NCBI GenBank assembly: GCA_951406725.2 | Contig: OX597817.1 | Span: 118,006,001-118,068,000, forward strand | DNA: 62,000 nt | Direction of reading: 5' to 3' | DNA from: Octopus vulgaris | Lineage: Eukaryota | Shown here: piece by piece, positions 18,724 through 61,300 of the stretch | How positions within the stretch are numbered: position 1 is the stretch's first letter | Layout: each line of letters begins with the position of its first letter | The notes under the pieces: generated by a model | Told to the model about the DNA's origin: nothing | Seen by the model: the letters and a program-made list of their open reading frames with translations, nothing else | The model's database searches: none | Position numbers and translations under genes: made by a program

Positions 18724-18821
<98 letters not shown>
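18714..18821. repeat. (GATA)n microsatellite within a compound (CT)/(TA)/(TG)/(GA) array
   Basis: Directly visible. Confidence 0.97.
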
Positions 18822-18822
<1 letters not shown>

Positions 18823-23805: not shown

Positions 23806-24140
23806 CCCATATATATATAAATATATATATATGTGTGTGTGTGTGTATCGCAAAATTACTAGGAAATTCTGGCCATTGAATGACGAGGAAATAAGCTGCG
23901 AATGGTACGTGTATCCTCTATTTGTCCAGTTTCCCGTCTGTTATGTTATCGTCTAGTTTTCAGTATGGATTTCCGGTTGCTGTGTTTTCGCCTTGTTGTG
24001 TTCTTTCTGTTCAACACTTGAGTTTAAATATATATATATAAATTAATAATAATAATATTAGGGAATAAATCCAAACTTACAGGGAAAAATTAGATTTAAG
24101 ATTAAATCCAATTTTATAGTATAAATATATTATATTACTA

Positions 24141-24413
24141 TATTAAATTAGAGATAAAACCACTATTAGGCAAATCAAACAAAATAAAAAAATAAAGTAA
24201 TTAATTAATTAATTAATTAATTAAATAAATAATATATAAATATGAAAATATACATACATATATATATTTGTATATATATATAAAATTTATTAGTTTAAAT
24301 TCTTTAAATAATTTTTTATTCTTAACTTTTATATTTTTAAATTAATTTTATGTATTGGCTTATGTTTTTCACTGTTTGATTTGCCTAATAGTGGTTTTAT
24401 CTCTAATTTAATA
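24141..24413. repeat. Inverted repeat with 41-bp perfect arms and an AT-rich spacer
   Basis: tattaaattagagataaaaccactattaggcaaatcaaaca (24141-24181) is the reverse complement of 24373-24413. A single copy of the motif recurs at 39621-39669. Confidence 0.92.
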
Positions 24414-24443
24414 TGATATATATATATATATATATAGGGGTTA

Positions 24444-25705: not shown

Positions 25706-25937
25706 TATATATCCACGCAGAGGAACACATATTGAGCTTTAATTCAAAGCCAAATTAGCTTGCTCACTGTGGGGTGGTTATCTCCCCTGTCAGTAGATAG
25801 ACAATGAGTTTCTTGTGACTATAAGGGTTATTGACTCTTGTTTCTATCAATGTAGATGCTAACATGCACCCCCAGTGACAATAGAATTTTTCCTTATATA
25901 TTTGGTTTTATATTGCGTCTAGGTACCTTCGTTATGT

Positions 25938-37929: not shown

Positions 37930-37972
<43 letters not shown>

Positions 37973-37978
37973 AAGGAG

Positions 37979-38069
37979 CTTCTACCGGACTAGAACTATT
38001 TCATTCAAAAGAAATCATCAGGAAGCCTGATGATTTCTTTTGAATGAAACAGTTCTAGTCCGGTAGAAG
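37979..38069. repeat. Near-perfect 44-bp hairpin with a 3-nt loop
   Basis: 37979-38022 is the reverse complement of 38026-38069 with one mismatch; loop aag; lies next to (TA)n. Confidence 0.95.
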
Positions 38070-38196
38070 ATCATTCTATAAAATAAATTAATTTACTCTG
38101 CTATGTATTGAGTACCTTATTTACTATGGTTAACCCCGACTCAACCCGGGACCTACATATATATATATATATAGATAGATTATAGATAGATAGATT

Positions 38197-38354: not shown

Positions 38355-39515
38355 CTAGCGGAAGGTGACCCGCTCTACGCGCGGGTAAGAGTGTGGTTGT
38401 TATTTTCTGTTGCTTCCTTTCAGCACGTAAAAAGCACCATCCGAACGTGGCCGATTGCAGCGCCGCCTCGACTGGCTTCTGTGCCGGTGGCACGTAAAAA
38501 GCACCAACCGATCGTTGCCGCTGCCAGCCCCCCTGGCACCTGTGCCGGCGGCACGAAAAAAGCATCCACTACACTCACAGAGTGGTTGGCGTTAGGAAGG
38601 GCATCCACCTGTAAAAAACACTGCCAGATCAGACTGGAGCCTGGTGCAGCCTCCTAGCTTCCCAGACCCCGGTCAAACTGTCCAACCCGTGCTAGCACAG
38701 AAAACGGACGTTAAACGATGATGATGATAATGATTCTCCCTCTTTGTTTCTCTCTCACTTTCCCACTCTCTTACTTTTCTTTTCTCTCGGACTCTCCCTC
38801 GCTTTCTCTTACTCTCTATCTTTATCTATCTGTCTCCCATTTATAAACAACAGAAGATCTTGAGTAAGTTGAGAAATAAAATATTTAGAAAGATCAATCA
38901 TAAATATCAGGCAGTGGCAACGGAAAGGTCTGCTTCAAGGCAGACAGCAAAACACTAACATTTAAAAGGGACAGACGAACTTGCGAGCTGAATAAAAGTA
39001 ATAAAATATTGGAAACCAAAGTTTGAATGGATAGAATCTGAGGATAGTAGAGTCACCACGGCTGGCATTTCTTAACGACGGACAGCAACGTATTGACAGT
39101 TCAACGGCTGGCGTAAAATTTTGAAATTGATGTAAAAGAAAATTCGTAAACACCAAGTTTTAAAGTGATTCTTTCTCACGACAGTAGACTCACCATGGCA
39201 ATCATTCAAAACTTCTTTATTATGGACGGCAACACATTGACGATTAAAAGGCTGGCGCAAATTTTTTAGCTTGATGTAACAGAGAATTCCTAAACACCCG
39301 CTCCTTGAAATTTGAATCCCCTTCTAGCCCCATTTAGACCCCTTTTCACATTTTGGTTAATATAACCCGATTTCATTCGGGTCTACTGAGGAATTTTGTC
39401 CTAGAGGTGACGCCTTTCTTTGAGGAAAAAAATAGTTGTCATGCAAACTTGCCAGCACTTTTAACATAGGTGTGCATATTTTCAGCTGAATCGACCGACT
39501 ACGTAATGCACACAT

Positions 39516-39571
<56 letters not shown>

Positions 39572-40426
39572 CACGCATTATATATACAAATGTATACAAA
39601 TGAGATATATATCTGTATAAATTAAATTAGAGATAAAACCACTAATAGGCAAATCAAACAGTGAAAAACCAAAAACAAAAACATTAAAAAAAAATATAAT
39701 ATAGAAAATATAGAAAATATAAAATTGAAAAATTTAAACTATTTAAATTGAAAATGAAAATTATTAAATTATATTTATAATATGTTTAAAAATATATATA
39801 AACTATGAAAAAGTATGAAAAAGTTTAAGATACATAAATACAGATATATACACTTTGTATATATACATTATATATACATATTTATATATAGAACACACAC
39901 ACACACATACATTATATATACATATTTATATATAGAACACACACACACATACACACATATATATTATATATACATATTTATATATAGAACACACACACAC
40001 ACACACACACATATAAACGAACGCAAGAATATCTGATTCATAATATTTGTTCTCATGCTCGTGTGTTGTTGGGGACAGACATATACTTAAAAGAACGCCG
40101 CCGAAGTGATGGGAAGGTAGGAAACAGAGTCAGTGAAAAAGAGAGGAAATAGCGAGAGTGACAGATACTTTAAATAACGGTAGTGGAGCTCTCAAAGTTA
40201 TAAATAAAGGGGAGTAAGAGAGGGAAAGGAGGAAATAGCGTGAGTGAGGACGATGGCCCCTAGCAACCATACCTTTTAAGATAGGGATTTCTAAGGTAGC
40301 TCATGAGCATCGTCACCTCATTCTACATGTCCCTGTAAATTTTGGAGCGAATCGGACGGGTGGTAGCGGCATTGAAAGCGATCCAAGCGGTAAAAACGCA
40401 TTTCAGTTTTATATATAGAGAAGAGA
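38355..40426 (-). mobile_element. Non-autonomous Helitron (third family) with nested SINE and repeats
   Basis: 3' hairpin acccgc/gcgggt plus CTAG|T at 38355; candidate 5' end TCTCTTCTCTATATATAAAACTG at about 40426; internal diverged tandem repeat at about 39045-39300. Linking the two ends is an inference. Confidence 0.55.
38423..38734 (+). mobile_element. 5'-truncated SINE with a (GAT)n tail
   Basis: Three internal gcacgtaaaaagcacc-like repeats (38423, 38490, 38551), a ggcgttaggaagggcatcc block, and a terminal aaacgatgatgatgat. Confidence 0.75.
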
Positions 40427-40472
40427 TATATATACACGCATATATATACACATATATATATGTATATATATA

Positions 40473-40543
40473 TCTCTATATATAAAATTGAAATGCGTTT
40501 TTACCTCTTGGATCGCATTCAATGCCACTATGTCCCGTCCGAT
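40473..40543 (+). mobile_element. Inverted partial copy of a Helitron 5' end
   Basis: Reverse complement of 40351-40421 with about 7 mismatches in 71 bp, across a (TA)-rich spacer. Confidence 0.8.
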
Positions 40544-45900: not shown

Positions 45901-46470
45901 AAACTATTTTCAATTAGTAGCACTTTCAAGAAAGTGCAAGAAAGAAAATAACATCGCGGTTATTGCGAACGATTCTTAACTAAAGGATGTGATAATTTGA
46001 AAACAATCAAATATTATTTGTCACAAAGATTATTTACTTGGTTACAGGCAATCTGATAATTGTTTACTGGTAAGAATATTAATATGGGTAAGTATCGCTT
46101 TTATTGGGGCTCATCCTTAATGTGTGGAATACTGAAGCATGCATATCGAAAATAGTTGTTACATATCGAAAATAGTTGCCAATCGTTATTGATCAGTGTA
46201 AATTCCATACATAAGCAATAAGGTTTAATAATTGCAGCGAGGACAGTAGTGTGGTAACTGGGAACTGTTTATGATTCTCGCAGAAAAGAGTGCGAATCCT
46301 TAAAGAAATCAGAAATGAATCTAATAACATTTATATACATGCTTAGTGTATCATCCAATTTTAGTTTACTGGTGAGGAGAAAGCTACAGCTATGTTTGAA
46401 TTTTATAGGACTTTGTCAAATGCATAAATCTATACAGAGGCTTTCTGTTATCAATTATTGACAGTTTCAA

Positions 46471-46682
46471 GCCTGCGAGCTGGCAAAAACGTTAGCACCC
46501 CGGGCATAATACTTAGCGACATTTTGACTGTCTTTACGTTCTAATTTCAAATTCCGCCTAGGTCGACCTTGCCTTTCATCCTTTCGGGGTCGATAAATTA
46601 AGTACCGGTTGCGTGCTGGGGTCGTTCTACTCGATTGTACCCCTTCCCCAAACTGTCGGGCATTGTGCCTAGAGTAGAAAAG
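46471..46682 (+). mobile_element. SINE, copy 1 of a tandem pair
   Basis: Head gcgagctggcaaaaacgttagc; body aattcaaattccgcctaggtcgaccttgcctttcatcctttcggggtcgat. Confidence 0.9.
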
Positions 46683-46700
46683 AATTATTAATAGTTTCAA

Positions 46701-46913
46701 GGTAGCGAGCTAGGCAGAAAAGTTTAACACGGCGAGCGAAATACTTAGCGGTATTTCGCTTGTCTTTACATTCTAATTTCAAATTCCGCCCAGGTCGACC
46801 TTGCCTTTCATCCTTTCGGGGTCGATATATTAAGTACCGGTTGGGTGCTGGGGTCGATCTAATCGACTGGACCTTTCCCAGAACTTGTGGGCCTTCTATC
46901 TAGAGTAGAAAAG
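46701..46913 (+). mobile_element. SINE, copy 2 of a tandem pair
   Basis: Same family; bounded by repeats of aattatt(g/a)a(c/t)agt. Confidence 0.9.
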
Positions 46914-48249
46914 AATTATTGACAGTCCCCCTACATATAGAAAAAGGGCTACAAATTATTTTAGCCAGAGTAATTGTACATACATAAATAATCAAATAGA
47001 GTAGAAAATAATTTAAAGTCAGTACTGGCACAATTTTAAATAGATAATTTAAAGGAATGACGTGCAAATGAAAGAAAATAATTCAAATTTCCTTCTTAGT
47101 TTTCAAAATTAAAAAAAATTAACGATGATTTTTAAGTGACGCTCACAAAAGGGGGAGCTAATCTGAAGATATTAAGTATCATTTTTAGAAAATTAATTTG
47201 AATATTCACGATTAAATCTTAAGTTTAGAATAGAATTTCATTTTTCTTTATAAATATCTATAAACATTTCATTTTGCTTTCAAACATTTTCCCAATAGGA
47301 AGTCCGGTGTGAAAGGAATTACTGTAAAGGATTCGTTTGATAGCATTTCGCAGTTTTAGTTTGAGATTGATAGAAAGAATTCGATTCAGGCAAAATCATA
47401 GATTGGTAAAGAAGTAGGATTTCATTTAGGTAGACATTAACTCTGAAACATGAAAACATCCATTTGGAAAAGAATTAAATCAATGCAAGTATAGTAATAT
47501 GTTTTGACTTATTAAAGTTGTATCTTTTCGTTTTGAGATACTTGTGTTATGCAAATGAAAATGCACAATTGGTATATCCTTCATCTTTTATATGGGATAT
47601 ATACAATTGTGTTTAATATACGATCTTGGTAAATGATGCATCTAAAACAACTTTCACATACGCAAATATTTCGATTTGTATGTTGAAATCAACTTGTTAA
47701 TAGTGTAGCATGAATAAGATTCTCACTCGTCCACAATAACGTTAAACCTTTTCCTTCTTTAAGTGTATAAATCAATGCCATGTTAATGTGATTGTAAAAC
47801 AACTTCTTATAATAGTGCCTAAAACATGTATATATAAACTTGTGTGTATGCATATGTCCATATACGTATGTATGAATAATACGATCTTTACTTTAATACC
47901 GTCCGTCGTCTATGTCCTATTTTTGGAAACCTTGCGCTGTTGCAAAAAGTTATTATGATCTCATAGTTGTGATTCAAGTGGACTTTGAACTTAGAAGTTA
48001 GTAGAGGAATTATTTCCTAGCTCAGAAAGAAATGCAATACTTGTGACAGATCTTGTGCTATGTTAGATATGCCAGCCCACCAGATATCTCCAGTGATGTT
48101 GAAACAAAGTATGAATAGAAACCATAGGAGTCCTAGTTGAAGAAAATGATATAATAATTATAGACACATATCAAACTAAGCCTCAAATTAATTCTTCTGA
48201 TATACCTTATCCACCTACACTATTCTCTGTATTGAAGTTTTGAATACAA

Positions 48250-49100
48250 ATTGATATATGCACAATATAGACCTGCTCTTACAATCACTCATCCCTAACA
48301 CTAGAGATAAAACAATCCACTGGCTCTAAAACAAATTCTCCTTAAAGTTGTCCGAAATTGGTAACGTTTTAGGTGCTTTGGGGCCAACTACAACGGCCAA
48401 GAATTATTTGACAGCATAGAGTACATCGATCTTGAATCATATTCTCCCGCAGTTTTGTTCTTTACTAATGCTGGTAAATTCTTTAGATCTCTCTCTCTCT
48501 CTCACTCATCCCATATTGATCCTTCGTTACCACTATAGAACGTGGATCTTTCGAAACCTTTAACGCCTACACTATGTACATTCATTAATTGCATTTATAA
48601 CCAGTACGTAGTCACAGAAAACAGCTTTAGTGTCTTTTTGACCTTCTAGCGCAATATCTATCAAACTATTATGGGTTCATCTGTTGTCAATTCACATCTG
48701 GTCTTACATAAATTCAAAATGCGCACTTATATCCAAGAAAAATCCATAAATCAGACAATTAAGCTTTTTCTGATTCTGGAAGAATGTGAGATAAATAGTC
48801 GGTGCTCCGAAAGTTCTGTGCTACATAACATTTGAAACCCACACCCTTTGTCTACAAATGACCGGAAGAAGTTAGCGTGATAATTAAAACCATGCTGCAA
48901 AAGAAGTGACCCATACTCTATAAACATCAACAATCTGCATACATCGTCCAATGTGGTGCACTCTAAAATTTCAGATATAGAACATCATCTACACGGATCA
49001 AAACAAATGATCTATCTCCATACAATAGAAAATATTTACGCACAACTGCATCCCCTGGAAAAAAAAAAACATTACACGAATCCTGAAGATTCTTTATGAG
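48250..49100 (-). mobile_element. Possible very decayed piggyBac-type transposase
   Basis: Scattered minus-strand pieces NFFRS (cf. DNFFTS), SEHRL (cf. RENRL), KDTKAV (cf. WKDNKPV) and PALVK.NK (cf. P.IV..YN) occur in the expected order; many frameshifts. Confidence 0.35.
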
Positions 49101-49955
49101 CATTAGAGGCAACTTGAGGATACCCACCTCTCAATTTTAGCCGATTATTTCGATCTCTGTCGAAAAGTATCGAAACTATATAGTTTGCCAAAATGTATTA
49201 AAGTTATCAATATCAAACCTGGTACAAGTTGTACAATACTAAATAACTGATTATTGTCGAACTAATTAAAGTCGCATTGAGGGAAATGTATATTCTACGT
49301 GATAGTACATTTGTAGTCCAAATCACAGTGAGAAAACTTTGCCATCCAAAAAAAAAAAAAGAAAATTACTTAATACCGTTTTTTTATTTGCCGTTGCACT
49401 CTTTAGTTATAAAGGCATTATAACATCTGATGCAGGATCTGAATAAAACCAGATACCAATATTTATGTTGTAATGGACGGAAAAATATGTGAGATGTTTA
49501 TAATGGAGTGGATTCTCCCAACAACCATGCATCCTTTCTATCAAAGAGTAGAATTAGTATTTGTTATCCAGTAATCAATTGCTGAATCATTATATTATAT
49601 GATCTAATGGTTCTGCATATACTAATTCTGAAAAACTTGAATTTTACAAATAAGAAATTAAATTAATATAATGAAATGAGATCATGCTCTAAAAACCGTA
49701 ATGATTTATTAGATAATTGTAGATTTAATGGAAAAAAAGAAAATAATAGGCAAAATTTTTCATTGTGTTAGTCCTAACACATTATAAGCCTCACTTGTGC
49801 ATTGCATGTGAAACAACCGATAAAGTTGCTGCAGCAATCTGAACTGATCTCAATATTGAGTGAAATACGGATAGTAGCATCAGTAAGCGTATATTCATAT
49901 ATGTGAATACATATATATAAATATCGTATTAATACTGATATATGAATACAATATG

Positions 49956-50015
<60 letters not shown>

Positions 50016-50094
50016 GAATATATATATATATATATATATACATAAGTTCATACGTATATGTACATACATCTATACGTATATCTATGAATATGTT

Positions 50095-50470
50095 AGCACA
50101 GGACGTCACGAAACGTGTACAGCAAAAAGTACGAAGTACGAGTACATGGAATATGAACTATTCTTTCGAACAACGAAACACACAAATGGAAACCAATATA
50201 AACAACATAAAGTACAACACGACATCAGTTTTTGGCAGTTTTCTAGTTTCGTATTTCCAGGAGTTAACAACAATAAACGCTTTCGATAAAACAGTTGCTC
50301 CCGCAAAGCAAATTAAATACAATTTGGAAATTTTTGCGAAGGGTGAACATTGGTAACCAAAACAGGACAGTGAAAACAAATAAGAAGGGCTCCTATGCCC
50401 CAAAGAGATTGTGGCGGTGAACCCGTAAACGCGTAAATCAAGCTTGCACAGCAGACATACAAGAACACGT
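50095..50470 (+). repeat. Dispersed (TA)n-embedded repeat module
   Basis: 50096-50195 matches 58261-58350; 50280-50380 matches 51880-51985. Confidence 0.8.
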
Positions 50471-50818
50471 CTTCCTGCATGCATACATACATACATTGAG
50501 CGATTGATACAATATATGTAATTCTTTATGTACATATGCATATATTTATATATAAATATATATATGTGGCTACAATCCTGTATGTTTTCTATTGTATTGT
50601 GGTTTTCTTTCAATGGTGGGGTCCTGGGTTCCGACAACGAGAGAGCACTTTGAAATCAGTATTCAATATATACGTAATAAGAAGGAACTGCCGTTGGAGT
50701 ATAGTGTCGATATCACAGCATTTATACCTAAATCAACCTCATTTTCTAATTGGACCTCTTATTCCCTCTTCCTCTTTCTGTACAAATATACACACACATG
50801 AGTAGACACACATATGTA

Positions 50819-50857
<39 letters not shown>

Positions 50858-50920
50858 AAAAAAAGAAGTTCGAAAATGCTGCTATAGTACACAAATTTTT
50901 AATTTTTATATATACATTAT

Positions 50921-50951
50921 AACATGTTTCGGTTCTTGAGAACCTTATCAA
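50921..50951 (-). ncRNA. Degenerate minimal hammerhead-like motif
   Basis: Minus strand UUGAUAA-GGUUC(ucaa)GAACC-GAAAC-AU-GUU: perfect 5-bp stem II and palindromic ACAUGU; two core substitutions and a poor stem I. Confidence 0.4.
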
Positions 50952-51300
50952 AAAAAGTTATATATAAAAAAAGATAGTTAATGCTATCAAATATAAAAAA
51001 TTCATTTATAATATACAATAGAGTCAGACATCAAAAGTTCATATATCGTGAAGTGAGTTCGTTCATGCTATATGTTTAGAGAGTATGATGTAGAGGTTCA
51101 TAGTGGTGATATGCATTCAATATAAAAAAATAGATCAAAATGGTGATATGCAGTCAATATAAAAAATTTAGATTTTACCTTGAGGAACTGTGATGACTTT
51201 TGGTCGGTGTTCGCTGGATCGTTCTGGTGAACCTTGTGAATTGTTTGGGTTTTATATCACCTGTTAGGTGGCCAGTCCAGCGTAACGTGACGTCATCAAC

Positions 51301-51511
51301 GTTTTGACCAATCGTTTCTTTAGGTGGCTTAGTCAAGTAGAACGGGACGTCATTAATATTCCGACCAATCCCGACCTATAGCTGTATTAGATCTGTCCCT
51401 TGTCTGTGTCCTGTTTTGACCAATCGTTTCGTCAGGTGGCTTAGTCAAGCAGAACGGGACGTCATCAATATTCTGACCAATCCCGACCTATAGCTGTATT
51501 AGATCTGCTCC

Positions 51512-51513
<2 letters not shown>
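51301..51513. repeat. Two-copy 112-bp tandem repeat rich in CCAAT and GACGTCA motifs
   Basis: Units start at 51301 and 51413. Confidence 0.92.
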
Positions 51514-51559
<46 letters not shown>

Positions 51560-51950
51560 GTATTTAACAAATTAATAAATAAAACATATGCATATATACA
51601 TACGTATACGTACGTACCTACATCTACATGTATATATATACATGCATATATGTACGTACCTATATCTACATGTATATATACATGCATATATGGGTACAGG
51701 ACACCACAAAAACGTCGAACACAATGAGAAACGAAAACATAAACACAAAACCAAGGAAAGGGACATTTTTCTTAAACAACGAAAAAATAGATTACAGGAC
51801 ATAGAACACAAGGAAAATTCCCCTTCTTCAGTCGCCTCTGTTTCATCTACTCCGCATTTTGAAGGTAAAGGCGAGACACGACTTCGTTGAAACATTCCTT
51901 CCCGCAAAAAGCAAATTAAATAAAATTTGAGATTTTTTTGTGGATGAGTA

Positions 51951-52078
51951 AAAATGGTAACAAAAACAGGACAGTAAAGACAAGCCCTCCTTGTCCGTGT
52001 TACTGTTATTCTCCTTGTCCTGTATTTTACTGTTTATATTTTGTACTGTCTTTACTGTCCTGTTTTTGTTACCATTTT
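51951..52078. repeat. Perfect 32-bp inverted repeat
   Basis: aaaatggtaacaaaaacaggacagtaaagaca (51951-51982) versus 52047-52078. Confidence 0.93.
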
Positions 52079-52080
52079 GA

Positions 52081-52846
52081 TCCTGTGGACCCCATTGGCC
52101 GCAAGAGATCTGGTTTTTTCTGGTGATAGTTGAGAGACGTCCCCCCAAGTGACACTCGTGCCTGCAGCCACGCCACATTAAAAAGAACTGCCCCCAGGAC
52201 CATGGTAAGTTCCTGCAAGAGTCACTGGATGCTACCTCCCCTACCCGGTCAAAGGGAGAGGTGGATGTGTTTGAGGAGGCTTAAGCCTCCTCAAACCAAA
52301 GGGGATTTAAAAGGAAGAAGGCGGGCGACAATGGTTGCCCGCCGAAGGACGCTAAGGCTTCGGGACGTGGGGGTGAGACTCCGGACAAAGCGGAAGAGCT
52401 CCATCCTCCCGAAGTCAGGAAGAAAAGAAAAAAAAGAAAGTAGAAGAACGGGTCATTGTAGGTGGAAGATGATGTACCATCTGCATATCCCGATGGTGTG
52501 CCACCCACGGTGGAAGAAACGAGCACCACACTTAAAGATGATGAATTAATTATATTTTTCTACAAGGACGGGGAGGTGAAAAATAGTAGAACATAAAGAG
52601 GCAGTAGATATGGCCTTCACACGGGATCCCGAATGGCCTCCGCAGATAGCTGTGGAGGTCATAAGGTTTCCCTTGTGGAAAAGGCTTAAATGATTTAGGG
52701 AGGGGTGTTACATATGGCCGGGTGGCCCTTACACTGCAATGACTTACATGTCCTACATGAGTGAGGCATGGAAAATGGCAGGATATAGGGACTCAAGTGG
52801 CATTGGAGATAATGACGGATATATTGATGGATATATCGATGAGTAG
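52081..52846 (+). pseudogene. Decayed gag-like/ORF1 protein with a CCHC zinc knuckle
   Basis: Frame from 52081 gives LVIVERRPPK*HSCLQPRHIKKNCP (C-x2-C-x4-H-x4-C with the first Cys as TGA at 52150), then a K/R/E-rich linker and a C-terminal segment after a frameshift ending TAG at 52846. Confidence 0.6.
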
Positions 52847-53284
52847 GAGATGAAAAAGCCTCGTTAGAGTGTTTGAAACATCATCTTATTGTATTATTTG
52901 CAGTGGTTTATAACCTCAAATGTGTTTAAAAAACATGTTAAGTAAGAGGTTTTAGTGCCTCCTTCTTGTAAGAGGTTTCAAACCTCATATTGATTTTTTA
53001 AATGAAGCAAGTATGTTTTCAAGAAAAATCCAATCGGCGGCTGTTCGGTTTCGTCTCTCATTTATTCATTTTATTTCATTTTCATTCATTGTGTTTGTCC
53101 AGCCCGCAGCTACTCTTTATGGCAAATAAAATGAATGAAATAAAGTAGCTTGCTTACCAACCTCACGGTTCTGGGTTCAGTCCTACTGCGTGGCACCTTC
53201 GGCATGTGTCTTCTACTGTAGCATCGAGCCGACTAAGACCTTGTGAGTGGATTTGGTAGACGGAAACTGAAAGAAGCACTCGTA

Positions 53285-53346
<62 letters not shown>

Positions 53347-53348
<2 letters not shown>

Positions 53349-53506
53349 ATTTTTTTCTCTCCTTGCTTTTTTTGTGTCCCTATCTGGAGCGTAGGCTCGA
53401 AACGTAAAAGACCTTTTCTATTCCTGAGCGTTATAGTTATACATCTGTTTGTTTTGTACACCACCTCTCTTCGTCTTTTCTTTTTTCGTAAACTTTCCGT
53501 ATATAT

Positions 53507-53594
<88 letters not shown>

Positions 53595-53770
53595 GTATGT
53601 ATATATATATATATATACGGAAAGTTTACGAAAAAAGAAAAGACGAAGAGAGGTGGTGTACAAAACAAACAGATGTATAACTATAACGCTCAGGAATAGA
53701 AAAGGTCTTTTACGTTTCGAGCCTACGCTCCAGATAGGGACAAAAAAAAAGCAAGGAGAGAAAAAAATGT
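53347..53770. repeat. Fold-back with 154-bp arms around a palindromic (TA)n spacer
   Basis: 53347-53500 versus 53617-53770; one mismatch seen. Confidence 0.96.
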
Positions 53771-53833
<63 letters not shown>

Positions 53834-53855
53834 AAATTAATATGTCACCATTATT

Positions 53856-54003
53856 CAATAGCCAAGATAAAACTCTGATTTTCGGATGCCGAAGTGGAAA
53901 TCCACAGCAACATCTTTTCGGTTAGATGGCCACATAACCGAAGAGATGGTGTTGTGGATTTCCACTTCGGCATCCAAAACTCAGAGTTTTATCTTGGCTA
54001 TTG
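53856..54003. repeat. Fold-back with about 69-bp arms and a 10-nt loop
   Basis: 53856-53924 versus 53935-54003; several mismatches. Confidence 0.93.
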
Positions 54004-54097
54004 TATAATTGTAACATATTATTTTATAGATAAATTTTTTCTATTTACATAATATTGAGATCTCTTTCTTTCATTTGTTGTCTTACCGTTTTTACCA

Positions 54098-54159
<62 letters not shown>

Positions 54160-54921
54160 ATGTTTGTGTGTCGGTATTTGTCTCCCAACATCGCTTGACA
54201 TTGGATGTTGGTGTGTTTATATACCCGTAACTTAGCGGTTCGGCAAAAGAGACCGATAGAATAAGTACTAGGCTTACAAAGAATAAGTCCAGGGGTCGAT
54301 TTGCTCTTCTAAAGGCGGTGCTCCAGCATGGCCGCAGTCAAATGACTGAAATAAGTAAAAGAGTAAAAGATTAAGATTATTTGTACAAATTTGTTTTCAA
54401 ACGCAGCTTTTTGTTGCTGACCTATGCATCCTTTCCTAAATTCATACGAATAACCTCAAAGGCCTGACGCACCCGTACTCACATATAGACATATATTGAT
54501 ATAATGTACCTATATATATATATATATATATAAAATTACAAATTGAGATAGGGGCTGTGAGTGCAACCCACTATGGGATAACATGTATCCAATATACTGC
54601 TAGTAAAGCACCCAACAAAGTTAATACATAAATGTTAAGAATTGCGATGCAATTAGTTCATTCACTGTATTATATGGGCAAAGGTAAAATGTTTTACCAC
54701 AAATTAATAATACAAAATAAGAAAATGGAGAAATGCATCTTAATCAATAATCAACTACCAGATAATACCCAATCATATAATTTATTAAACCACTACATAT
54801 GAACATTAATGTCAAACATAATAATATAGAAGAAAACAAGGTACATCAATGAGTAATAAGATACCATAAGTACAGTATGTATAAGTGAATATAAATAAAT
54901 ACAAATATAAATATAAACTAC

Positions 54922-55048
54922 ATTTTACAGCTGTTTCAGCCATGCAGATATGGGTGCCTCATTATGCTCATATTAGCCATGCGTGGTAGGTTCATATGTA
55001 GTTATAAATGAGACACTTACAAAAATATCCCAAGGCCTCTTCAGAGAT
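54922..55048 (-). ncRNA. Hammerhead ribozyme candidate in the left arm; stem I weakened
   Basis: Inverted copy of 55256-55382 with the core intact; the 3' strand of stem I reads AAAU instead of AGAU. Confidence 0.5.
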
Positions 55049-55102
55049 TATGAAGAACAAACTAAATAGAACATATGTATGTATATTGTTGTATATTATT
55101 AT

Positions 55103-55137
<35 letters not shown>

Positions 55138-55255
55138 AGGAGTATGGGTATATGCACTCATATGTATGTGTATATTATATATTATGGGTATGTACCCACT
55201 CTTGTATGGGTGTACCTCCTCTGATTTTCCTATTTAATTTAGTTTGTTCTTCATA

Positions 55256-55382
55256 ATCTCTGAAGAGGCCTTGGGATATTTTTGTAAGTGTCTCATTTAT
55301 AACTACATATTAACCTATCACACATGGCTAATATGAGCATAATGAGGCACCCTTATCTGCATGGCTGAAACAGCTGTAAGAT
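55256..55382 (+). ncRNA. Type I minimal hammerhead ribozyme candidate with a long helix II insertion
   Basis: AUCU-CUGAAGA(55260-55266)-GGCC[92 nt]GGCU-GAAA(55367-55370)-C-AGCU-GUA(55376-55378)-AGAU. All core positions are present, with a 4-bp stem I, a 4-bp stem II (one G-U) and palindromic ACAGCUGU as stem III. Confidence 0.65.
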
Positions 55383-55591
55383 GTAGTTTATATTTATATT
55401 TGTATTTATTTATATTCACTTATCCATGTTGTAATTATTGTATCTTATTACTCATTGATGTACATTGTTTTGTTCTATATTATTATGTTTGACCTTAATG
55501 TTCATATGTAGTGGGTTAATAAATTATGTGATTGCGTATTATCTAGTAGTTGATTATTGATTAAGATGTATTTCTCCATTTTCTTATTTTG

Positions 55592-55623
<32 letters not shown>

Positions 55624-56960
55624 CCAACACATTCATATGTGTGTGTGTGTGTGTGCTTTTAAAGAGACACTATGCAACTACACGCTCCCATCTTTAGCAA
55701 AACAATTATATATGCAAGGAAAAATTGATGACCGCATTGCACCACATACTGTATAGAGTCAGGTTTAATATGAAGTTAGACAACAACAACATATCCGTGA
55801 CTAATTACAAATACCGTTGTCTAATTAGCGAAGCACATAATTTAGACATTTAGAGTATAATATTCTATTTAGTTTATATGATTAACACCAAGAAACTTCA
55901 TAATTCATTGCATTGCTTCAAGAGCGTCTGGTATTTCTTTGACTGTATCCTACTTCTAGACACACAATAAGTTCGATCTTGTTCATCATATTTTGCTATA
56001 TCATTTGTTCAGTCTGTGAAGAATATAGGGTACGTTAATTAACATTCCTAATCCAAGAGAGAAAACTTGAAGCAGTATGTATATAATCGAAATGCTCAAT
56101 AAAAATAGAAAATAACGTTAACATTACCTTACATTTCAGAGAAATAAATATCCATTCCTAACCAGCGAATCTCAAATCAAAATTCTAACAAGCAGTAATT
56201 TGTCGGTTGTTTCGACTTACAAGAAGGCTTGGAATTATTTTCCGTCAAATCCCAACTTTCGAAATGGTGTTATTAGAGCATATAGCTTGTATTATAGTGC
56301 GCAGATGTGTGTGTGTGTGTATACATGCGTGTGTGTGTTTGTTAGTGCGTGTATGCATGTACGTATGCATACACAAGAGGCAGTATGCATGTACGTGTGC
56401 ATAGATAGTATTAAGTTCATTATTTGTGAGTGTACTCCTTGGATATATAACAGTGATAATTATATTCATGAAAAACGATAGAGCTTTCTCTGTGAAATTA
56501 CCCAGGCACCAGCTCACAGAGAAACATGAATTCACATATTCAAATCTTCAACCATACGCGCACAGATACATACAAGCATGCATTCATATGTCAGTGTGAT
56601 TGTAATTTATGTGACAGTGTGAGTCTTCGTGATCCTGCAAAATATATTTTTTTGTTAGGGGCATTCTAACAAACATGCAATGGCATATGGTGTGATAGTT
56701 TCCGGGGATAAAATCAAATGATCATTCACAAATTTTGTTCTGCACAGAATCTACCTATGTAGATATTTTTCCTTAGGTAAGTTGAAGTAATGTTGAAAAA
56801 TAAAAGAGAGAAGATATAATAAATAGTTTATGTATTTGTTTTGTAAGGGTTTGATGTGAAACCGTATGTTGCAACAGATATTGTTATACATGGGGATGAT
56901 CAAATTGAATAAGCAGAACAAGATTGGTCCAGGCCATGTCTAACATATATATATATATAT

Positions 56961-57162
56961 GTACAATATGCTAAATGTAGACCAAATATCGTGTCTACAT
57001 TTAGCTTATTGGATGTCCACTTAATGGTCATCCTTCTTACATGAATGTAATATAATTTTTCAAAATCTTCAGATTTTTCACTATACTAGGCTACTGGTTT
57101 AAATATTAACGAAATTAATATCAATTTATTACTCTTATTACTTAAACATACATATATATATT

Positions 57163-57197
<35 letters not shown>

Positions 57198-57484
57198 ATA
57201 TACTATAATACATTTATGTATGTTTGTATATATGTGTGGGTGTGCGTGTGTATGTATGTATATATATAGATTGATAGATAAAACTTACTTGGAAGAGGAT
57301 GCGTGGCGTTCAATCATATGACACTATATATATATATGTAAATATATATATATAGTGTCATATGATTGAACGCCACGCATCCTCTTCCAAGTAAGTTTTA
57401 TCTATCAATCTATATATATACATACATACACACGCACACCCACACATATATGTACAAACATACATAAATGTATTATAGCTATAT

Positions 57485-57519
<35 letters not shown>

Positions 57520-57716
57520 AATATATATATGTATGTTTAAGTAATAAGAGTAATAAATTGATATTAATTTCGTTAATATTTAAACCAGTAGCCTAGTATA
57601 GTGAAAAATCTGAAGATTTTGAAAAATTATATTACATTCATGTAAGAAGGATGACCATTAAGTGGACATCCAATAAGCTAAATGTAGACACGATATTTGG
57701 TCTACATTTAGCATAT

Positions 57717-57721
<5 letters not shown>
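56961..57721. repeat. Fold-back with about 365-bp near-identical arms centred on (TA)n
   Basis: 56961-57325 versus 57354-57721; differences limited to small indels in the microsatellite part. Each arm contains a 13-bp internal hairpin gctaaatgtagac/gtctacatttagc. Confidence 0.96.
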
Positions 57722-57765
<44 letters not shown>

Positions 57766-57780
57766 ATATATATATATATA

Positions 57781-58153
57781 CTAGCAGTATCGCCCGGCGT
57801 TGCTCAGGTTTGTAAGGGAAATAACTATAAAGCATCTTTAGAGAGTTATAGCCAAAAAATAGCAAAAAATGGAAAAAAAAATGATGGTAAATTTTTTTGA
57901 GAGTAAAAAGGTTGAGTTGCGTCCCCTAGACAGTCTGTGGTTTGTTTTTTTTATTCTCGACCCCATGTCGAATTTATCGATTTTTTTCAGAACTGGGGGA
58001 ACTTTTCAAAATTTTCGCTGCGTTAGTTTTGAATTATGACATTGGGCTATGCGTGTGTCAAGTTTCATCAGAATCGGTTGAAAGCCGTGGTCAGGGTGAG
58101 GGTACGAGAAAACAGACACACAGAAACATACAGACAAACTCCGTTTATATATA

Positions 58154-58155
<2 letters not shown>
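57781..58155 (-). mobile_element. Small non-autonomous Helitron (375 bp)
   Basis: The hairpin-CTAG 3' end matches the 11013 copy; the 5' 240 bp match 1176-1419; inserted in (TA)n. Confidence 0.88.
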
Positions 58156-58184
<29 letters not shown>

Positions 58185-58260
58185 CGTATATACATAATTA
58201 TATGTACATGCTTATATCGATACGTATATATATATATATATATATAAATATGCATATGTG

Positions 58261-58350
58261 AGCACAGCACGTCATAAAGTGTGTACAACACAAAAATACG
58301 AAGTACGAGTACATGGAATATAAACTATTTTTTCGACCAACAAAAGACAC
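58261..58350 (+). repeat. Second copy of the 50096 module
   Basis: tacgaagtacgagtacatggaata...cacaaatggaa is shared. Confidence 0.8.
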
Positions 58351-61300
58351 AAATGGAACACTTTCGTTATCCTTTCTCTCTCTTATTCTTTTACGTCCAT
58401 GTCCCGCTATTGTATCCTATTACTCTGATATAAGAAAATTAATAAAATATCCACTTATATTGCCTTTAGTCGCTTAGATTATTAAAAATTTATTATATGC
58501 TATTAAATTAGTATATCATTAAAGTTGCCATCTATGTATCATACTTAATACATGCACACTATCGATTGGCCTGTCAACGTAGTATTTGTCCTGAGATAAC
58601 GTCTTTTATGGATTGTCATGTTAAAGACACAGAAGATATTAGAGACGAAACACCGTCCCAGCTGCTGCCAGCCTAAATGTCAAATGAATTGATTACAATA
58701 CATAACTATTATTAATACGTACCTACACCAATTGGCCATGCCGAATTTTAATTAACCAAGGCATTTTTGGAATGTTCTGATCAGTTTCTCTTCTCCTGGC
58801 GAATTCTCGCTTGTGCATGTGGCTGTTTGCAAATATGTATCATTAAAAAGCCCCAGTTAAGCCGAAATGCATCTAGCACCGTCATTAGCGATTGGTGATA
58901 TGAATGTTCGTCTCTCATTTTCTGTTATATCTATTGTATTTTTTTACAGAGCAGGTAGAGCTCTCCGGAAAAATACTGCAGTAACTGATATATCACCAGT
59001 TTGTATGCGTTAGGCACGTTGTGTGTGTGTGTATATGTGTGTGCGTGCGTTCTGTGTGTGTGCTTGTGTATGTACATATTTTTTAAATATAATTATAGAT
59101 GCACATACAATCGTATTTAATAATTGACTAAATCATATATAGTGCCAAAGGCATGTCCATATTTAGTTATTATTAACATTCTTAAAAGTTGTTCAAGTTT
59201 AAGTTGGTGTTAAATTATAACAATGTGTCTGGAAATGTTGCTAAACATCGTAATTTTTGTTCAAAACAATTATTTCAGGAATCGTATAATTTCCTAAAGG
59301 TAATTTAAAATAGATTATTTCTTGGATATGCTTTTAAATTTGCGACATGTCTGTATGTATGTATGTATGTGTTCGTTAGTAGATACCGTACTGGCTGATG
59401 GGCGTAAGCTATTCTCAGCTGATGGAGATGTATTTATTAGTTTTGTAAGGAAGCACAGTTGGTGGTAGCTAACTGTTTCTTCCAAAGAAAAGTAAGAGAA
59501 CATCAAGGAATTAAGAATTTACATGCTTACAGGGATGACTGTTCGTTATCTGCAGATAAACTGATCACTTACGACATGTTTACGTATTATTGTTTATCTA
59601 TTAGCTGAGCCTAATCAAACTTACTTTGGCCAGTGCAAAATTTATCGTGTTTTTTACATAGATACATTACGTTTTAAAGTATCTTGGCCTTTAGCAATTT
59701 GCATAATAAAAACTGGCAAATCATATAGCACATTTTAGCTAATGACATGCATTTAAATTTAAAGAAATAGCGGTGTACTAATGACATACAGAGAACTTCT
59801 CATTTAAAATTTAGTTCTTATTTGAAGAAAATATATAGAATACTAGTGGTACTAATTGTCACAAAGGGCGACCATTTTAGGCATAGGTTAATTAGTACAT
59901 GAAAGCATAACTCAAGTTCAAATTCATGCCATTGGTCCAAATGAGCTATTTCTATAGCTTGTTTTATTTTGTTATTAGAGAAAAGGAACAGCACTTTAGA
60001 GAAATGTACTGATGTAAATTATATTTTGCGATACAATGGATATTGTTTATATATATATATAAATGAAAATTCAGAATTTACGTTATAAAATATAGATGAG
60101 TTATCAAGAACGATATTATCTTAGCAAAATACTAAACTTACAGGCAACGTTTTGTGAGAGGAGTAAGTGAACATCAAATTTACCTGGATCAAAACTCGTT
60201 TAAAGAGGTTGGAATGCTAGTATAATATAACACAAAATATTTACAGGAAATGGAATACAGTCAAGAAAATTAGAGTTCATGATAGAGTTCATAATATATT
60301 AAGTATCTTGAGATCAGTTCAAATATGTTTGGGATAACTTATATGTTATATATGTTTGGTTAAATAGCATTTTCTCTACAGTTTGCTTTAGAGAAAATTC
60401 TTGCGTTAACGATAACTGTTAAAAGCACCACAGTCAGTCCATAGCATTTGCTATAGTAGATGCATTTCTTGCCTGTTACCGATCTTCAGTCCCGCTGTAC
60501 CGAACGAGACGTCAATAGCACTAGACCTTTCTCTGGTATACAAAGACTGATTTGAAGGTAAGCTTGCTCATATTACTGACGACACTGCAAAGAAGGTATT
60601 CCATTTCATATCATCATATTGTTAGGACTATGATTTACTTCGATTTTTCTACTTGAACATTTTCAAACAATGTTCACGTATTGTTATTGTTTTATTGTTG
60701 TTGTTTGTTTTTGTTGTTGTTGGGTTTGACCTGTTTCTGTTCTTGCTCTTGCTGTTATATATATTAATTCTACTGACACCTTACTTGCTGCAGATAAGAA
60801 TATATGTCTTACGCTGGAATATTAAGCTATGTTCGTGTACACTTGTGGTAACATATTAAGATACGGTTAATATTAGTCGAGAGTAGAATATTTAACGAAT
60901 ATAAGATTCCGACATTACAAAATAGGATTCTTGTCATGCTCATTTATTATTTACTAAAGTATGAGTTACTATTTTATGTTCAGGCTCTACAAGACAGACA
61001 ATATTGATTTTTCGCCGATCATTTATATCGACATTGGTACCATTTAGACAATGCATCGTTAGAGACGTACATACAGAGAACAAACCGATAAATGCTAAGT
61101 CCGGTTAGGATTCGAGAAAACGATGTCCTCTGTTAAACACCATTATCAAGTAATTCAATACTAGAAATCCTCGCTTATATTTCAGAATTATAAAGCATAT
61201 TTTTCCGTTGTTCAGATACACATGAAATATATATAATTTCGTGCAATCTTCATTTACTTTACATTGACGCTTTCTGTTCTATTCAAAGTAGAAATGGTAC

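What the first reader, a model, noticed from the sequence alone, without database searches (positions are those of the whole stretch)
49940..58350. Candidate system: (TA)n arrays collecting ribozyme-bearing modules that become fold-backs
Seen: within about 8 kb there are five inverted duplications (51951, 53347, 53856, 54710, 56961), the four from 53347 onward bounded by or centred on (TA)n and with mutually unrelated arms; I saw no TSDs or transposon-type TIR family. Three carry hammerhead-like motifs, and two more degenerate motifs lie in solo modules. Known: minimal dimer-type hammerheads with palindromic stem III mark Penelope-like elements and non-autonomous retrozymes; PLE copies often show inverted pLTR structures. 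Inference: a diverse set of non-coding PLE-dependent retroelements targets (TA)n and is inverted during integration or by later template switching, creating long dsRNA sources in a lineage known for heavy A-to-I editing. I cannot verify novelty without a search.
Basis: partly seen in the sequence, partly recalled or inferred. Interest (0 to 1): 0.8.

Follow-up and report, generated by a model that had tools for sequence, protein, structure and literature searches.

The report
Palindromic duplications hinged on (TA)n repeats
A repeat-rich, non-coding stretch of what looks like an octopod genome holds a real cluster of DNA palindromes whose hinges and edges lie in TA-dinucleotide repeats. It contains no hammerhead ribozymes and no Penelope-type element, so the palindromes most likely arose by ordinary fold-back copying at self-complementary TA repeats.

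Summary
The five inverted duplications exist at the stated places. Four large ones lie within 4.5 kb: IR-A (155-nt arms, one substitution), IR-B (97 nt, 89%), IR-C (358 nt, 95%, substitutions only) and IR-D (about 365 nt, no substitutions). IR-A and IR-D have a (TA)n array at the centre and at both outer edges. IR-C has one in its spacer and one at its right edge. IR-B has one near its left edge only. Across ten palindromes in the window, 8 of 20 outer edges lie within 15 nt of a TA array, against 1.2 expected (P about 1e-4).

The ribozyme claim fails. Rfam finds no hammerhead even at E<=10, and a descriptor search finds no core with a helix II. The only reverse transcriptase in the window is LINE-type, and no GIY-YIG domain was found.

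TA arrays here also flank ordinary mobile elements: a mariner, a 5'-truncated LINE and retroposons ending in TA runs.

Best reading (confidence 0.45): (TA)n is its own reverse complement, so strand annealing there is orientation-blind. A fold-back or template switch then duplicates the sequence between two arrays in inverted orientation.

Copy number of the arms, empty sites and read support could not be tested. IR-A and IR-D could still be assembly artefacts. Modest interest.

The parts
49951..50044 (.). (TA)n array adjoining module 1
   Evidence: TRF, period 2, 47.5 copies
50045..50379 (-). Module 1. Dispersed repeat whose conserved end adjoins the TA array. Read as a minus-strand retroposon with a TA-rich 3' tail (strand is inferred).
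   Evidence: Homology to 51513-51983 (65%) and to 58146-58358 (81%). The copies share the TA-proximal end and differ in how far they extend.
51230..51513 (.). 112-bp direct tandem repeat, about 2.5 copies. The only direct tandem in the region; it carries no hammerhead.
   Evidence: TRF. No Rfam hit. The motif-like positions differ between the copies when read directly.
51515..51558 (.). (TA)22 array adjoining module 2
51560..51983 (-). Module 2, same family as module 1
51951..52078 (.). Small fold-back: 32-nt perfect arms (51951-51982 and 52047-52078) with a 64-nt spacer. No TA array involved. Module 1 has the segment once.
53120..53345 (+). SINE-like repeat ending in (TA)31 at 53283-53345. 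That array is the left outer boundary of IR-A.
   Evidence: Older copy at 3227-3408 on the minus strand, ending in a TA-rich tail. TRF.
53346..53500 (+). IR-A left arm
   Evidence: 154/155 nt match the right arm; one G/T difference
53501..53616 (.). IR-A centre: (TA)n with CATA/TATG interruptions placed symmetrically near both arms
53617..53770 (-). IR-A right arm
53771..53833 (.). (TA)25(TG)6: right outer boundary of IR-A and left neighbour of IR-B
53829..54030 (.). IR-B: spacerless hairpin-type palindrome, 97-nt arms at 89%, centre not TA
   Evidence: The RNA fold is -126 kcal/mol, z = -21.
54706..55073 (+). IR-C left arm. Its outer edge lies in complex, non-TA sequence.
55074..55228 (.). 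IR-C asymmetric spacer containing (TA)14 at 55107-55133
55229..55598 (-). IR-C right arm. Its outer edge abuts (TA)16 at 55596-55623.
56945..56960 (.). (TA)8: left outer boundary of IR-D
56961..57324 (+). IR-D left arm. Composite sequence with its own 48-nt hairpin (56964-57011) and an internal (TA)(TG)11 run.
57325..57354 (.). IR-D centre: (TA)7 GTAAA (TA)8. With the adjoining arm ends it folds as a perfect DNA hairpin with a 4-nt loop.
57355..57721 (-). IR-D right arm
   Evidence: 364 matches, no substitutions, 3 indel columns
57722..57780 (.). (TA)29: right outer boundary of IR-D, directly preceding the next repeat
57781..58145 (+). Dispersed retroposon-like repeat ('el57781'). It starts right after a TA array and ends in one.
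   Evidence: Copies at 1176-1468 (5'-truncated, same TA tail, 93%) and 11013-11116 (5' part, again preceded by (TA)n)
58146..58358 (-). TA array shared tail-to-tail by el57781 (+) and module 3 (-), followed by module 3

Best explanation
The large palindromes IR-A, IR-C and IR-D are DNA-level inverted duplications of whatever sequence lay between two neighbouring (TA)n arrays.

(TA)n is its own reverse complement. It readily forms hairpins and cruciforms, and a 3' end that stalls or breaks inside it can anneal to either strand.

Proposed steps, all inferred:
1. Stalling or breakage occurs in array b of a stretch (TA)a-X-(TA)b.
2. The nascent 3' end folds back on (TA)b and copies X backwards.
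3. On reaching the copy of (TA)a, or a short TA/TAT microhomology as in IR-C, the end re-anneals to the remaining (TA)b and synthesis continues.

The product is (TA)-X-(TA)-X'-(TA). It has no target-site duplication, and arms from different events are unrelated. Arms then diverge by point mutation, which gives the observed identity series of 100%, 99%, 95%, 89% and 88%.

The TA arrays themselves are plentiful because they serve as tails and landing sites of local LINE/SINE-type retroposons and as TA targets of Tc1/mariner elements.

The small spacerless hairpins (IR-B, and 37967-38081 elsewhere in the window) may have a different origin, for example as MITE-like elements.
For: Shown:
- All three junctions of IR-A and IR-D lie in TA arrays. 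IR-C has an array in its spacer and one at its right edge.
- The TA association is far above random placement.
- The symmetry axis of IR-A lies in pure (TA)n, with the CATA interruptions mirrored on both sides.
- The centre of IR-D is a perfect hairpin with a 4-nt loop, as expected of a fold-back primer.
- The arms are mutually unrelated and single-copy within the window, whereas true dispersed repeats have 2-3 copies in the same 62 kb.
- The IR-D arm is composite: it carries its own hairpin and an internal (TA)(TG)11 run. It therefore looks like a stretch of local DNA, not one compact element.
- The left edge of IR-C ends in complex sequence and its right edge in (TA)16. That asymmetry suits a return switch by microhomology better than insertion into a TA target.
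- IR-C differs only by 18 substitutions in a mixed spectrum (8 transitions, 10 transversions), so it is an aged, real structure.

From the literature:
- AT/TA repeats form hairpins and cruciforms, and cause breaks and replication problems (PMC9890227, PMC12972899; abstracts seen).
- Fold-back inverted duplication and short-range template switching are established mutation mechanisms (PMC3907307, PMC7954356).
Against: - No unduplicated ('solo') allele or orthologous locus could be examined.
- Genome-wide copy number of the arms is unknown. A control search showed that the protein database cannot see this species' repeats, and the DNA scans were empty.
- In IR-C the TA array is off-axis and the spacer is asymmetric, so the fold-back did not occur exactly in that array, or the spacer changed later.
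- IR-B, 37967-38081, 40351-40543 and the 51951 fold-back lack a (TA)>=6 centre, so one mechanism does not cover everything.
- Family E exists both solo (39618-39749) and as an inverted pair (24140-24414). This shows that a dispersed repeat can occupy such a structure, which fits insertion-coupled models equally well.
- The differences between the arms of IR-A and IR-D lie only in low-complexity contexts, as expected of a very young event but also of an assembly error.
Confidence: 0.45

Rival explanations
1. Insertion-coupled pairing of TA-tailed retroposons. An RNA with a (UA)n tail can anneal to either nicked strand of a (TA)n target. LINE-type target-primed reverse transcription started on both strands, or snap-back of the cDNA, would then lay down two copies in opposite orientation in one event.
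For: - TA arrays flank retroposon-type repeats. el57781 begins after (TA)n in two copies and ends in (TA)n in two copies, one of them 5'-truncated.
- A 5'-truncated LINE at 21817-23808 has (TA)67 at its 5' junction and (AT)12 at its 3' end.
- el57781 (+) and module 3 (-) share one TA array tail-to-tail.
- Family E occurs solo and as an inverted pair around a TA-rich centre.
Against: - No arm of IR-A to IR-D has another copy in the window, whereas the known repeats do.
- The two arms of each pair have identical outer ends, which is unlikely for independent 5'-truncated insertions.
- Double priming predicts 5' ends at the centre, not a TA array.
- The left edge of IR-C is not in a TA array.
- The IR-D arm looks composite.
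Confidence: 0.2
2. IR-A and IR-D are assembly artefacts. All (TA)n arrays collapse to one self-complementary node, so an assembler or gap-closer can walk X-(TA)-X'-(TA)-Y where the genome has X-(TA)-Y. Small arm differences would then be allelic or consensus errors.
For: - Only these two have TA arrays at all three junctions together with 99-100% identical arms.
- Their few differences are indels or a substitution in homopolymer or microsatellite context.
- Internal microsatellites have the same length in both IR-D arms.
Against: - The arrays at the left edge and centre of IR-D are only 14-16 nt, too short to confuse a graph built with usual k-mer sizes.
- The centre of IR-D holds a unique 5-nt GTAAA loop that must exist in reads.
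- Older palindromes of the same design cannot be artefacts: IR-C at 95% by substitutions only, and 40351-40543 at 88%.
- Gene conversion between arms can also keep identity high.
Confidence: 0.15
3. The palindromes are fold-back or MITE-type DNA transposons moved by Tc1/mariner-like transposases. Their TA target duplication is invisible inside TA arrays.
For: - Tc1-like and mariner-like remnants are frequent in the window.
- A mariner with TTAGGTC terminal repeats sits inside a TA-rich run.
- 24140-24414 has perfect 42-nt terminal repeats and a related copy elsewhere.
- IR-B and 37967-38081 have the size and spacerless form of hairpin MITEs.
Against: - No palindrome terminus matches the mariner or Tc1 terminal repeats, or another palindrome's terminus.
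- Four unrelated families, each single-copy in 62 kb, would have had to land within 4.5 kb.
- Arms of 155-365 nt are far longer than usual terminal repeats.
- The flanks of IR-C give no convincing duplication.
Confidence: 0.12
4. One reading: non-autonomous, hammerhead-bearing retrozymes mobilised by Penelope-like elements target (TA)n and are inverted on integration.
For: Naiad-clade Penelope-like elements do prefer (TA)n targets and often carry an adjacent inverted, 5'-truncated copy (PMC8557442). The hexamer CGAAAC is enriched in the region.
Against: - No hammerhead was found by Rfam at E<=10 or by descriptor.
- The candidate motifs lack helix II or essential core bases. They differ between the two copies of the 112-bp tandem repeat (sequence read directly).
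- No GIY-YIG or Penelope-type protein was found. The window's reverse transcriptase is LINE-type.
- Naiads lack canonical hammerheads and are only old remnants in cephalopods (PMC8557442).
- Retrozymes are direct tandem repeats, not palindromes (PMC7229834).
Confidence: 0.03

Closest known systems
Fold-back inverted duplications and short-range template-switch mutations (PMC3907307; PMC7954356)
   Same: Two arms in inverted orientation with a short or absent spacer. The junctions lie at short inverted repeats or microhomology. There is no target-site duplication, and arm sequences are arbitrary.
   Different: The described human cases are either very large (kb to Mb, with spacers of kilobases) or very small (tens of nt). 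These are 150-400 nt and are hinged specifically on a dinucleotide microsatellite. The mechanism was not observed here, only inferred from anatomy.
Cruciform-forming AT/TA repeats and palindromic AT-rich repeats as fragile sites (PMC9890227, PMC12972899, PMC7999016)
   Same: A self-complementary TA run is the structure-forming element at the breakpoints.
   Different: Those studies report breaks, deletions and translocations. They do not report local palindromic duplication of the neighbouring unique sequence.
Naiad-type Penelope-like element insertions (PMC8557442)
   Same: Preference for (TA)n sites, inverted-repeat insertion structures, and target duplications that cannot be discerned.
   Different: No Penelope-type coding remnant, pseudo-LTR or 5'-truncated partner is present. 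The arms are of equal length, and the families are unrelated to each other.
Non-LTR retrozymes with type I hammerheads (PMC7229834)
   Same: Low-GC, non-coding repeats of a few hundred nucleotides that would give highly self-paired RNA.
   Different: Retrozymes are direct tandem repeats, each carrying a hammerhead. These are inverted pairs with no hammerhead.
MITEs and fold-back transposons with a TA target (Tc1/mariner-dependent); the palindromic Harbinger repeat of frog (PMC5625713)
   Same: Hairpin-shaped elements flanked by TA that could act as sources of double-stranded RNA.
   Different: No shared terminal repeats, no demonstrable duplication and no second copy of any arm in the window.

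Membership tests
Hammerhead ribozyme (type I, including minimal Penelope-type) | Conserved core CUGANGA ... GAAA ... UH | tested here: not met
   The relaxed core with a 7-17 nt spacer occurs 0 times in the region. Four hits with a 4-60 nt spacer all fail on helix II, and two of them are the same 15-mer present in both IR-D arms.
Hammerhead ribozyme (type I, including minimal Penelope-type) | Helices I, II and III around the core; a match to the Rfam covariance models | tested here: not met
   No match at gathering score in the window. No hammerhead family among 148 matches at E<=10 in 49000-59500. No core with a helix II of 3 bp or more.
Non-LTR retrozyme | Direct tandem repeats of about 150-450 bp, each carrying a type I hammerhead (PMC7229834) | tested here: not met
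   The structures are inverted pairs. The only direct tandem (112 bp x 2.5 at 51230-51513) has no hammerhead.
Penelope-like element or derivative | Telomerase-like reverse transcriptase with a GIY-YIG endonuclease somewhere in or near the element family | tested here: not met
   Pfam on eight chosen ORFs of 110 aa or more from across the window and on ten ORFs of 55 aa or more in the region gave RVT_1 (LINE-type) and Tc1/mariner domains only. The reverse transcriptase matches R2 and LINE-1 ORF2p. Only ORFs were tested, not all frames.
Penelope-like element or derivative | Pseudo-LTR with an adjacent inverted, 5'-truncated copy; (TA)n target for Naiads (PMC8557442) | tested here: inconclusive
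   TA flanks are present. However, the arms are of equal length, not full-length plus truncated, and no direct pseudo-LTR is present.
Fold-back / template-switch inverted duplication | Inverted arms joined at a short self-complementary sequence, with no target-site duplication | tested here: met
   (TA)n lies at the centre of IR-A and IR-D and in the spacer of IR-C. The IR-D centre is a hairpin with a 4-nt loop. No duplications were seen.
Fold-back / template-switch inverted duplication | One arm is the original local sequence; an unduplicated allele or orthologue exists | not testable with these tools
   No genome of this or a close species could be reached.
MITE / fold-back DNA transposon | Many copies sharing terminal inverted repeats, each flanked by a target duplication | tested here: inconclusive
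   No second copy and no shared termini within 62 kb. A TA duplication cannot be seen inside TA arrays. Genome-wide copy number is unknown.
Assembly artefact | The structure is not supported by reads spanning it | not testable with these tools
   No reads were available. IR-B and IR-C are excluded by their substitution divergence.

The most novel reading that the evidence does not exclude
TA arrays act as orientation-blind landing pads. The target and the (UA)n tail of local retroposon RNAs are both self-complementary, so LINE-type reverse transcription can be primed on both strands at once. This would routinely deposit hairpin-forming inverted pairs. Such a dedicated generator of long double-stranded RNA loci could explain why octopus has an exceptionally high fraction of loci forming near-perfect dsRNA, and its heavy hyper-editing (PMC5625713).
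Probability: 0.12. Interest if true: 0.65.

Novelty: new member of a known kind. Interest (0 to 1): 0.3.

Why it matters
Porath et al. (PMC5625713) found that octopus has an exceptionally high fraction of loci able to form long, nearly perfect dsRNA. They did not identify the source, whereas in frog the source is a palindromic Harbinger repeat.

If small palindromes hinged on abundant (TA)n arrays are common genome-wide, they would be a simple mutational source of those substrates. They would also be a source of local fragility and assembly trouble.

For annotation, the practical points are these:
- The structures are not ribozyme-bearing retroelements.
- The near-perfect ones need read-level confirmation.
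- Rfam microRNA-like hits on them are generic hairpin matches below the gathering score.

Tried and rejected
1. Hammerheads. Two Rfam runs, my own descriptor with 0 or 1 core mismatch and motif counts against 200 dinucleotide shuffles gave no ribozyme. Only the hexamer CGAAAC is enriched.

2. RNA-editing or RNA-intermediate signature in arm mismatches. There is no A/G excess, though the numbers are small.

3. Copy number of the arms through protein databases.
- Twenty exact look-ups of window ORFs found nothing. The first call may have failed on stop and start-codon formatting.
- A control search with an ORF of a repeat known to be multi-copy also found nothing. The database therefore cannot answer the question, and I ran no further search on an arm.

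4. DNA scans of metagenome contigs with a 28-mer from the IR-A arm and a 23-mer from el57781 both returned nothing.

5. Related genome. The LINE ORF's best named relative is from Argonauta hians, at 59% identity. Its 21-kb locus has only 3 TA arrays, and its LINE tail is not TA. It is too distant to help.

6. Search for a host exon in the window, to fetch an orthologous locus. Only transposon-derived ORFs were found.

7. Shared termini with the window's mariner or Tc1 elements: none.

8. (TG)n and (AG)n arrays as non-self-complementary controls. Palindrome centres on them are 0, but with only 17 and 6 arrays the test has no power.

9. Alignment of module 1 with module 2, to show an unduplicated state of the 51951 fold-back. 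Homology ends at the fold-back, so this is suggestive only.

Full report
SETTING. The window is AT-rich (about 34% G+C), carries no tRNA gene and has no Rfam match at gathering score. It is crowded with microsatellites: 58 arrays of (TA)>=6 in 62 kb, covering 3.2% of the bases.

Its only recognisable coding remnants are transposon-derived:
- a LINE-type reverse transcriptase at 21983-23725 (RVT_1), whose palm region matches R2 and LINE-1 ORF2p structures;
- Tc1-like remnants at 6.5-7.6 kb and 24.5-25.7 kb;
- mariner-like remnants at 35.9-36.7 kb and, more weakly, at 29.3 kb.

The best named relative of the LINE ORF is a protein of the octopod Argonauta hians, at 59% identity. The source is therefore probably an octopod, but it is not identified. 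The finding region 49940-58350 has no ORF with a Pfam domain.

THE OBSERVATION. All five inverted duplications are real.
- IR-A: arms 53346-53500 and 53617-53770, with one G/T difference and one indel. A 116-nt (TA)n centre separates them, and its CATA interruptions are mirrored next to each arm. The structure is bounded by (TA)31 and (TA)25. The (TA)31 is the tail of a SINE-like repeat.
- IR-B: 53829-54030, a spacerless hairpin with 97-nt arms at 89%. Its centre is not TA. A (TA)25(TG)6 run ends a few bases to its left.
- IR-C: 54706-55073 and 55229-55598, with a 358-nt core at 95%. The 18 differences are all substitutions (8 transitions, 10 transversions). The asymmetric spacer of about 155 nt contains (TA)14. 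The right edge abuts (TA)16. The left edge lies in ordinary sequence.
- IR-D: arms 56961-57324 and 57355-57721, with no substitutions and three indel columns in low-complexity context. The centre is (TA)7-GTAAA-(TA)8, which with the adjoining arm ends folds as a perfect hairpin with a 4-nt loop. The outer boundaries are (TA)8 and (TA)29.
- The fifth (51951-51982 / 52047-52078) is a 32-nt perfect inverted repeat with a 64-nt spacer, inside a dispersed repeat. It has no TA array.

The window holds further palindromes outside the region:
- 24140-24414: perfect 42-nt termini and a TA-rich middle;
- 37967-38081: 94%, with a TA array at its left edge;
- 40351-40543: 88%, with a TA-rich imperfect centre;
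- 10893-10957.

Random placement of the ten palindromes gives 1.16 outer edges within 15 nt of a TA array, against 8 observed (P about 5e-5). It gives 0.99 centres touching an array, against 4 observed (P about 0.013). The link to TA arrays is therefore more than chance. Two caveats apply: the region was chosen because of the cluster, and in a duplication model the flanking arrays are partly products of the event itself.

THE RIBOZYME CLAIM. Rfam's covariance models find nothing at gathering score in the whole window. At E<=10 over 49000-59500 the 148 listed matches are generic hairpin and low-complexity hits, mostly to microRNA families and all below gathering score. None is a hammerhead family.

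My own descriptor finds no exact CUGANGA...GAAA core with a helix II of 3 bp or more anywhere in the window. With one core mismatch it finds nothing in any arm or module.

The relaxed core used by Craig et al. (7-17 nt spacer) occurs 0 times in the region. With a 4-60 nt spacer there are four hits:
- two are the same 15-mer CTGAAGATTTTGAAA in both IR-D arms, where a 4-nt spacer leaves no room for helix II;
- one is CTGATGAAAC... in el57781;
- one is in module 2.

The most hammerhead-like string is on the minus strand of the 112-bp tandem repeat at 51230-51513. Read directly, it has U where the essential C3 should be and lacks G12. Its two copies also differ at exactly these positions (TGATGA against TAATGA; CTGACGAAAC against CTAAAGAAAC).

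What is true is that the hexamer CGAAAC is enriched: 9 occurrences against 1.5 in shuffles. This reflects the A-rich 'ACGAAA' style of the local repeat family, and the palindromes double some counts. Hammerhead motifs are absent, not merely unenriched.

WHAT THE TA ARRAYS ARE. In this window they are junctions of ordinary mobile elements.
- The repeat at 57781-58145 begins immediately after a TA array here and at 11013. It ends in '...CCGTTTATATATAGA(TA)n' here and in the 5'-truncated copy at 1176-1468. A conserved 3' end with a TA tail plus 5' truncation is the pattern of LINE-mediated retroposition.
- The three 'modules' (50045-50379, 51560-51983, 58252-58358) share the end that adjoins a TA-rich run and differ in length at the other end.
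- Module 3 and the 57781 repeat share one TA array tail-to-tail.
- The 5'-truncated LINE has (TA)67 exactly at its 5' junction and (AT)12 after its 3' end.
- The mariner-like element has TTAGGTC... terminal repeats embedded in TA-rich runs on both sides.

'TA arrays collecting modules' is thus a fair description. The collectors, however, are LINE/SINE-type retroposition and TA-targeting Tc1/mariner transposition, both well known.

MECHANISM. The feature that unites IR-A, IR-C and IR-D is that their joins lie in a sequence that is its own reverse complement. I therefore favour a DNA-level fold-back or template switch (confidence 0.45). A 3' end stalled or broken in array b of (TA)a-X-(TA)b pairs back on the array and copies X in reverse. 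It then returns to the original template through the copied (TA)a or through a TA/TAT microhomology.

This model accounts for:
- TA at all three junctions of IR-A and IR-D;
- the mirrored CATA interruptions in the IR-A centre;
- the 4-nt loop at the centre of IR-D;
- the absence of target-site duplications;
- the mutually unrelated arms;
- the composite nature of the IR-D arm;
- the one-sided TA boundary of IR-C;
- the range of arm identities, which implies a continuing process.

Hairpin and cruciform formation, breakage at AT/TA repeats, fold-back inverted duplication and short-range template switching are all documented elsewhere (PMC9890227, PMC12972899, PMC3907307, PMC7954356). Every step here is inferred from anatomy, and none was observed.

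RIVALS.
(a) Retroposition-coupled pairing at an orientation-blind TA target (0.2). It is attractive because the neighbourhood is full of TA-tailed retroposons, and because family E exists both solo (39618-39749) and as an inverted pair (24140-24414). Against it: no arm of IR-A to IR-D has another copy in the window, the paired arms have identical outer ends, and the model predicts 5' ends at the centre, not a TA array.

(b) Assembly artefact for IR-A and IR-D (0.15). TA arrays are self-complementary graph nodes, and these two are nearly perfect. Against it: the edge and centre arrays of IR-D are only 14-16 nt, its centre carries a unique loop, and older palindromes of the same design cannot be artefacts.

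(c) Fold-back or MITE-type DNA transposons with an invisible TA duplication (0.12). This is plausible for the small spacerless hairpins. For the large palindromes there are no shared termini.

Craig et al. do report (TA)n targeting and inverted copies for Naiad elements. They also report that Naiads lack canonical hammerheads and survive only as old remnants in cephalopods (PMC8557442). Retrozymes are direct tandem repeats (PMC7229834).

LIMITS. I could not reach the genome of this species or of a close relative. Exact protein look-ups, a control homology search, two DNA scans and a distant octopod locus were all uninformative. Three things remain open: the copy number of the arms, the existence of unduplicated alleles, and read support. 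These are exactly what would separate the hypotheses.

VERDICT. The structural observation is real and non-random. The ribozyme and Penelope interpretation is not supported. What remains is a cluster of small palindromic duplications hinged on TA microsatellites in a transposon-rich octopod-like region. It is a new instance of a known kind of mutation. Its possible relevance is to the unusually high dsRNA potential reported for octopus (PMC5625713). Interest 0.3.

Noticed in passing
window 21817-23808: Dead, 5'-truncated LINE. The reverse-transcriptase ORFs are broken into three pieces. (TA)67 sits exactly at the 5' junction and (AT)12(TG)n follows the 3' end. The 3' end (23754-23780) shares 24 of 27 nt with the SINE-like repeat at 54311-54337, which suggests a LINE-SINE partnership.
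   Followed up: partly
window 35620-36960: Mariner-like element (HTH_48 and Transposase_1 remnants) with roughly 30-nt TTAGGTC... terminal repeats, inserted inside TA-rich runs. This is a direct example of a TA-targeting transposon sitting in a TA array. A weaker mariner HTH remnant lies at 29255-29458.
   Followed up: partly
window 6537-7634 and 24523-25712: Two Tc1-like copies, about 77% identical, with a broken transposase (HTH_Tnp_Tc3_2). The second begins immediately after the (TA)10 that closes the 24140-24414 palindrome.
   Followed up: partly
window 24140-24414 and 39618-39749: Repeat family 'E'. One locus is an inverted pair with perfect 42-nt termini and a TA-rich middle. The other is a solo copy next to (TA)17(TG)11. 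It is the only case in the window where the same repeat is seen both solo and folded back.
   Followed up: partly
window 52269-52296: A perfect 28-nt palindrome (...GAGGAGGCTTAAGCCTCCTC...) in a G+C-richer unique stretch (52080-53050). That stretch has no Pfam match and no repeat partner in the window.
   Followed up: no
window 53771-53833, 54098-54171, 55596-55655, 39516-39571, 23809-23848, 57148-57197: TA arrays are repeatedly followed directly by (TG)n, forming composite (TA)n(TG)n runs at element junctions. The cause is unknown; it could be a tail type of some retroposon or a mutational drift of TA arrays.
   Followed up: no
window 49954-50379, 51513-51983, 58146-58358: Three copies of the 'module' repeat lie in the same orientation within 8.4 kb and bracket the whole finding region. 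This could be chance for an abundant family or a trace of an older local duplication.
   Followed up: no
window 2879-3170, 271-394, 39893-40015, 46453-46926, 38423-38564: Several short direct tandem duplications: 147 bp x2, 61 bp x2, 52 bp x2.4, about 230 bp x2, and 67 bp x2 in a G+C-rich patch. Long microsatellites are also present: (TTA)38 at 4851-4965, (GAT)21 at 9272-9335 and (ATAG)40 at 18664-18822.
   Followed up: no
locus L001 (Argonauta hians, GCA_054771915.1): The related LINE copy in this distant octopod ends in an (ACATTAAA)-like tail, not in TA. Its 21-kb neighbourhood has only 3 TA arrays, against roughly 20 per 21 kb in the window. TA-array density is therefore not uniform among octopods, or among loci.
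   Followed up: partly
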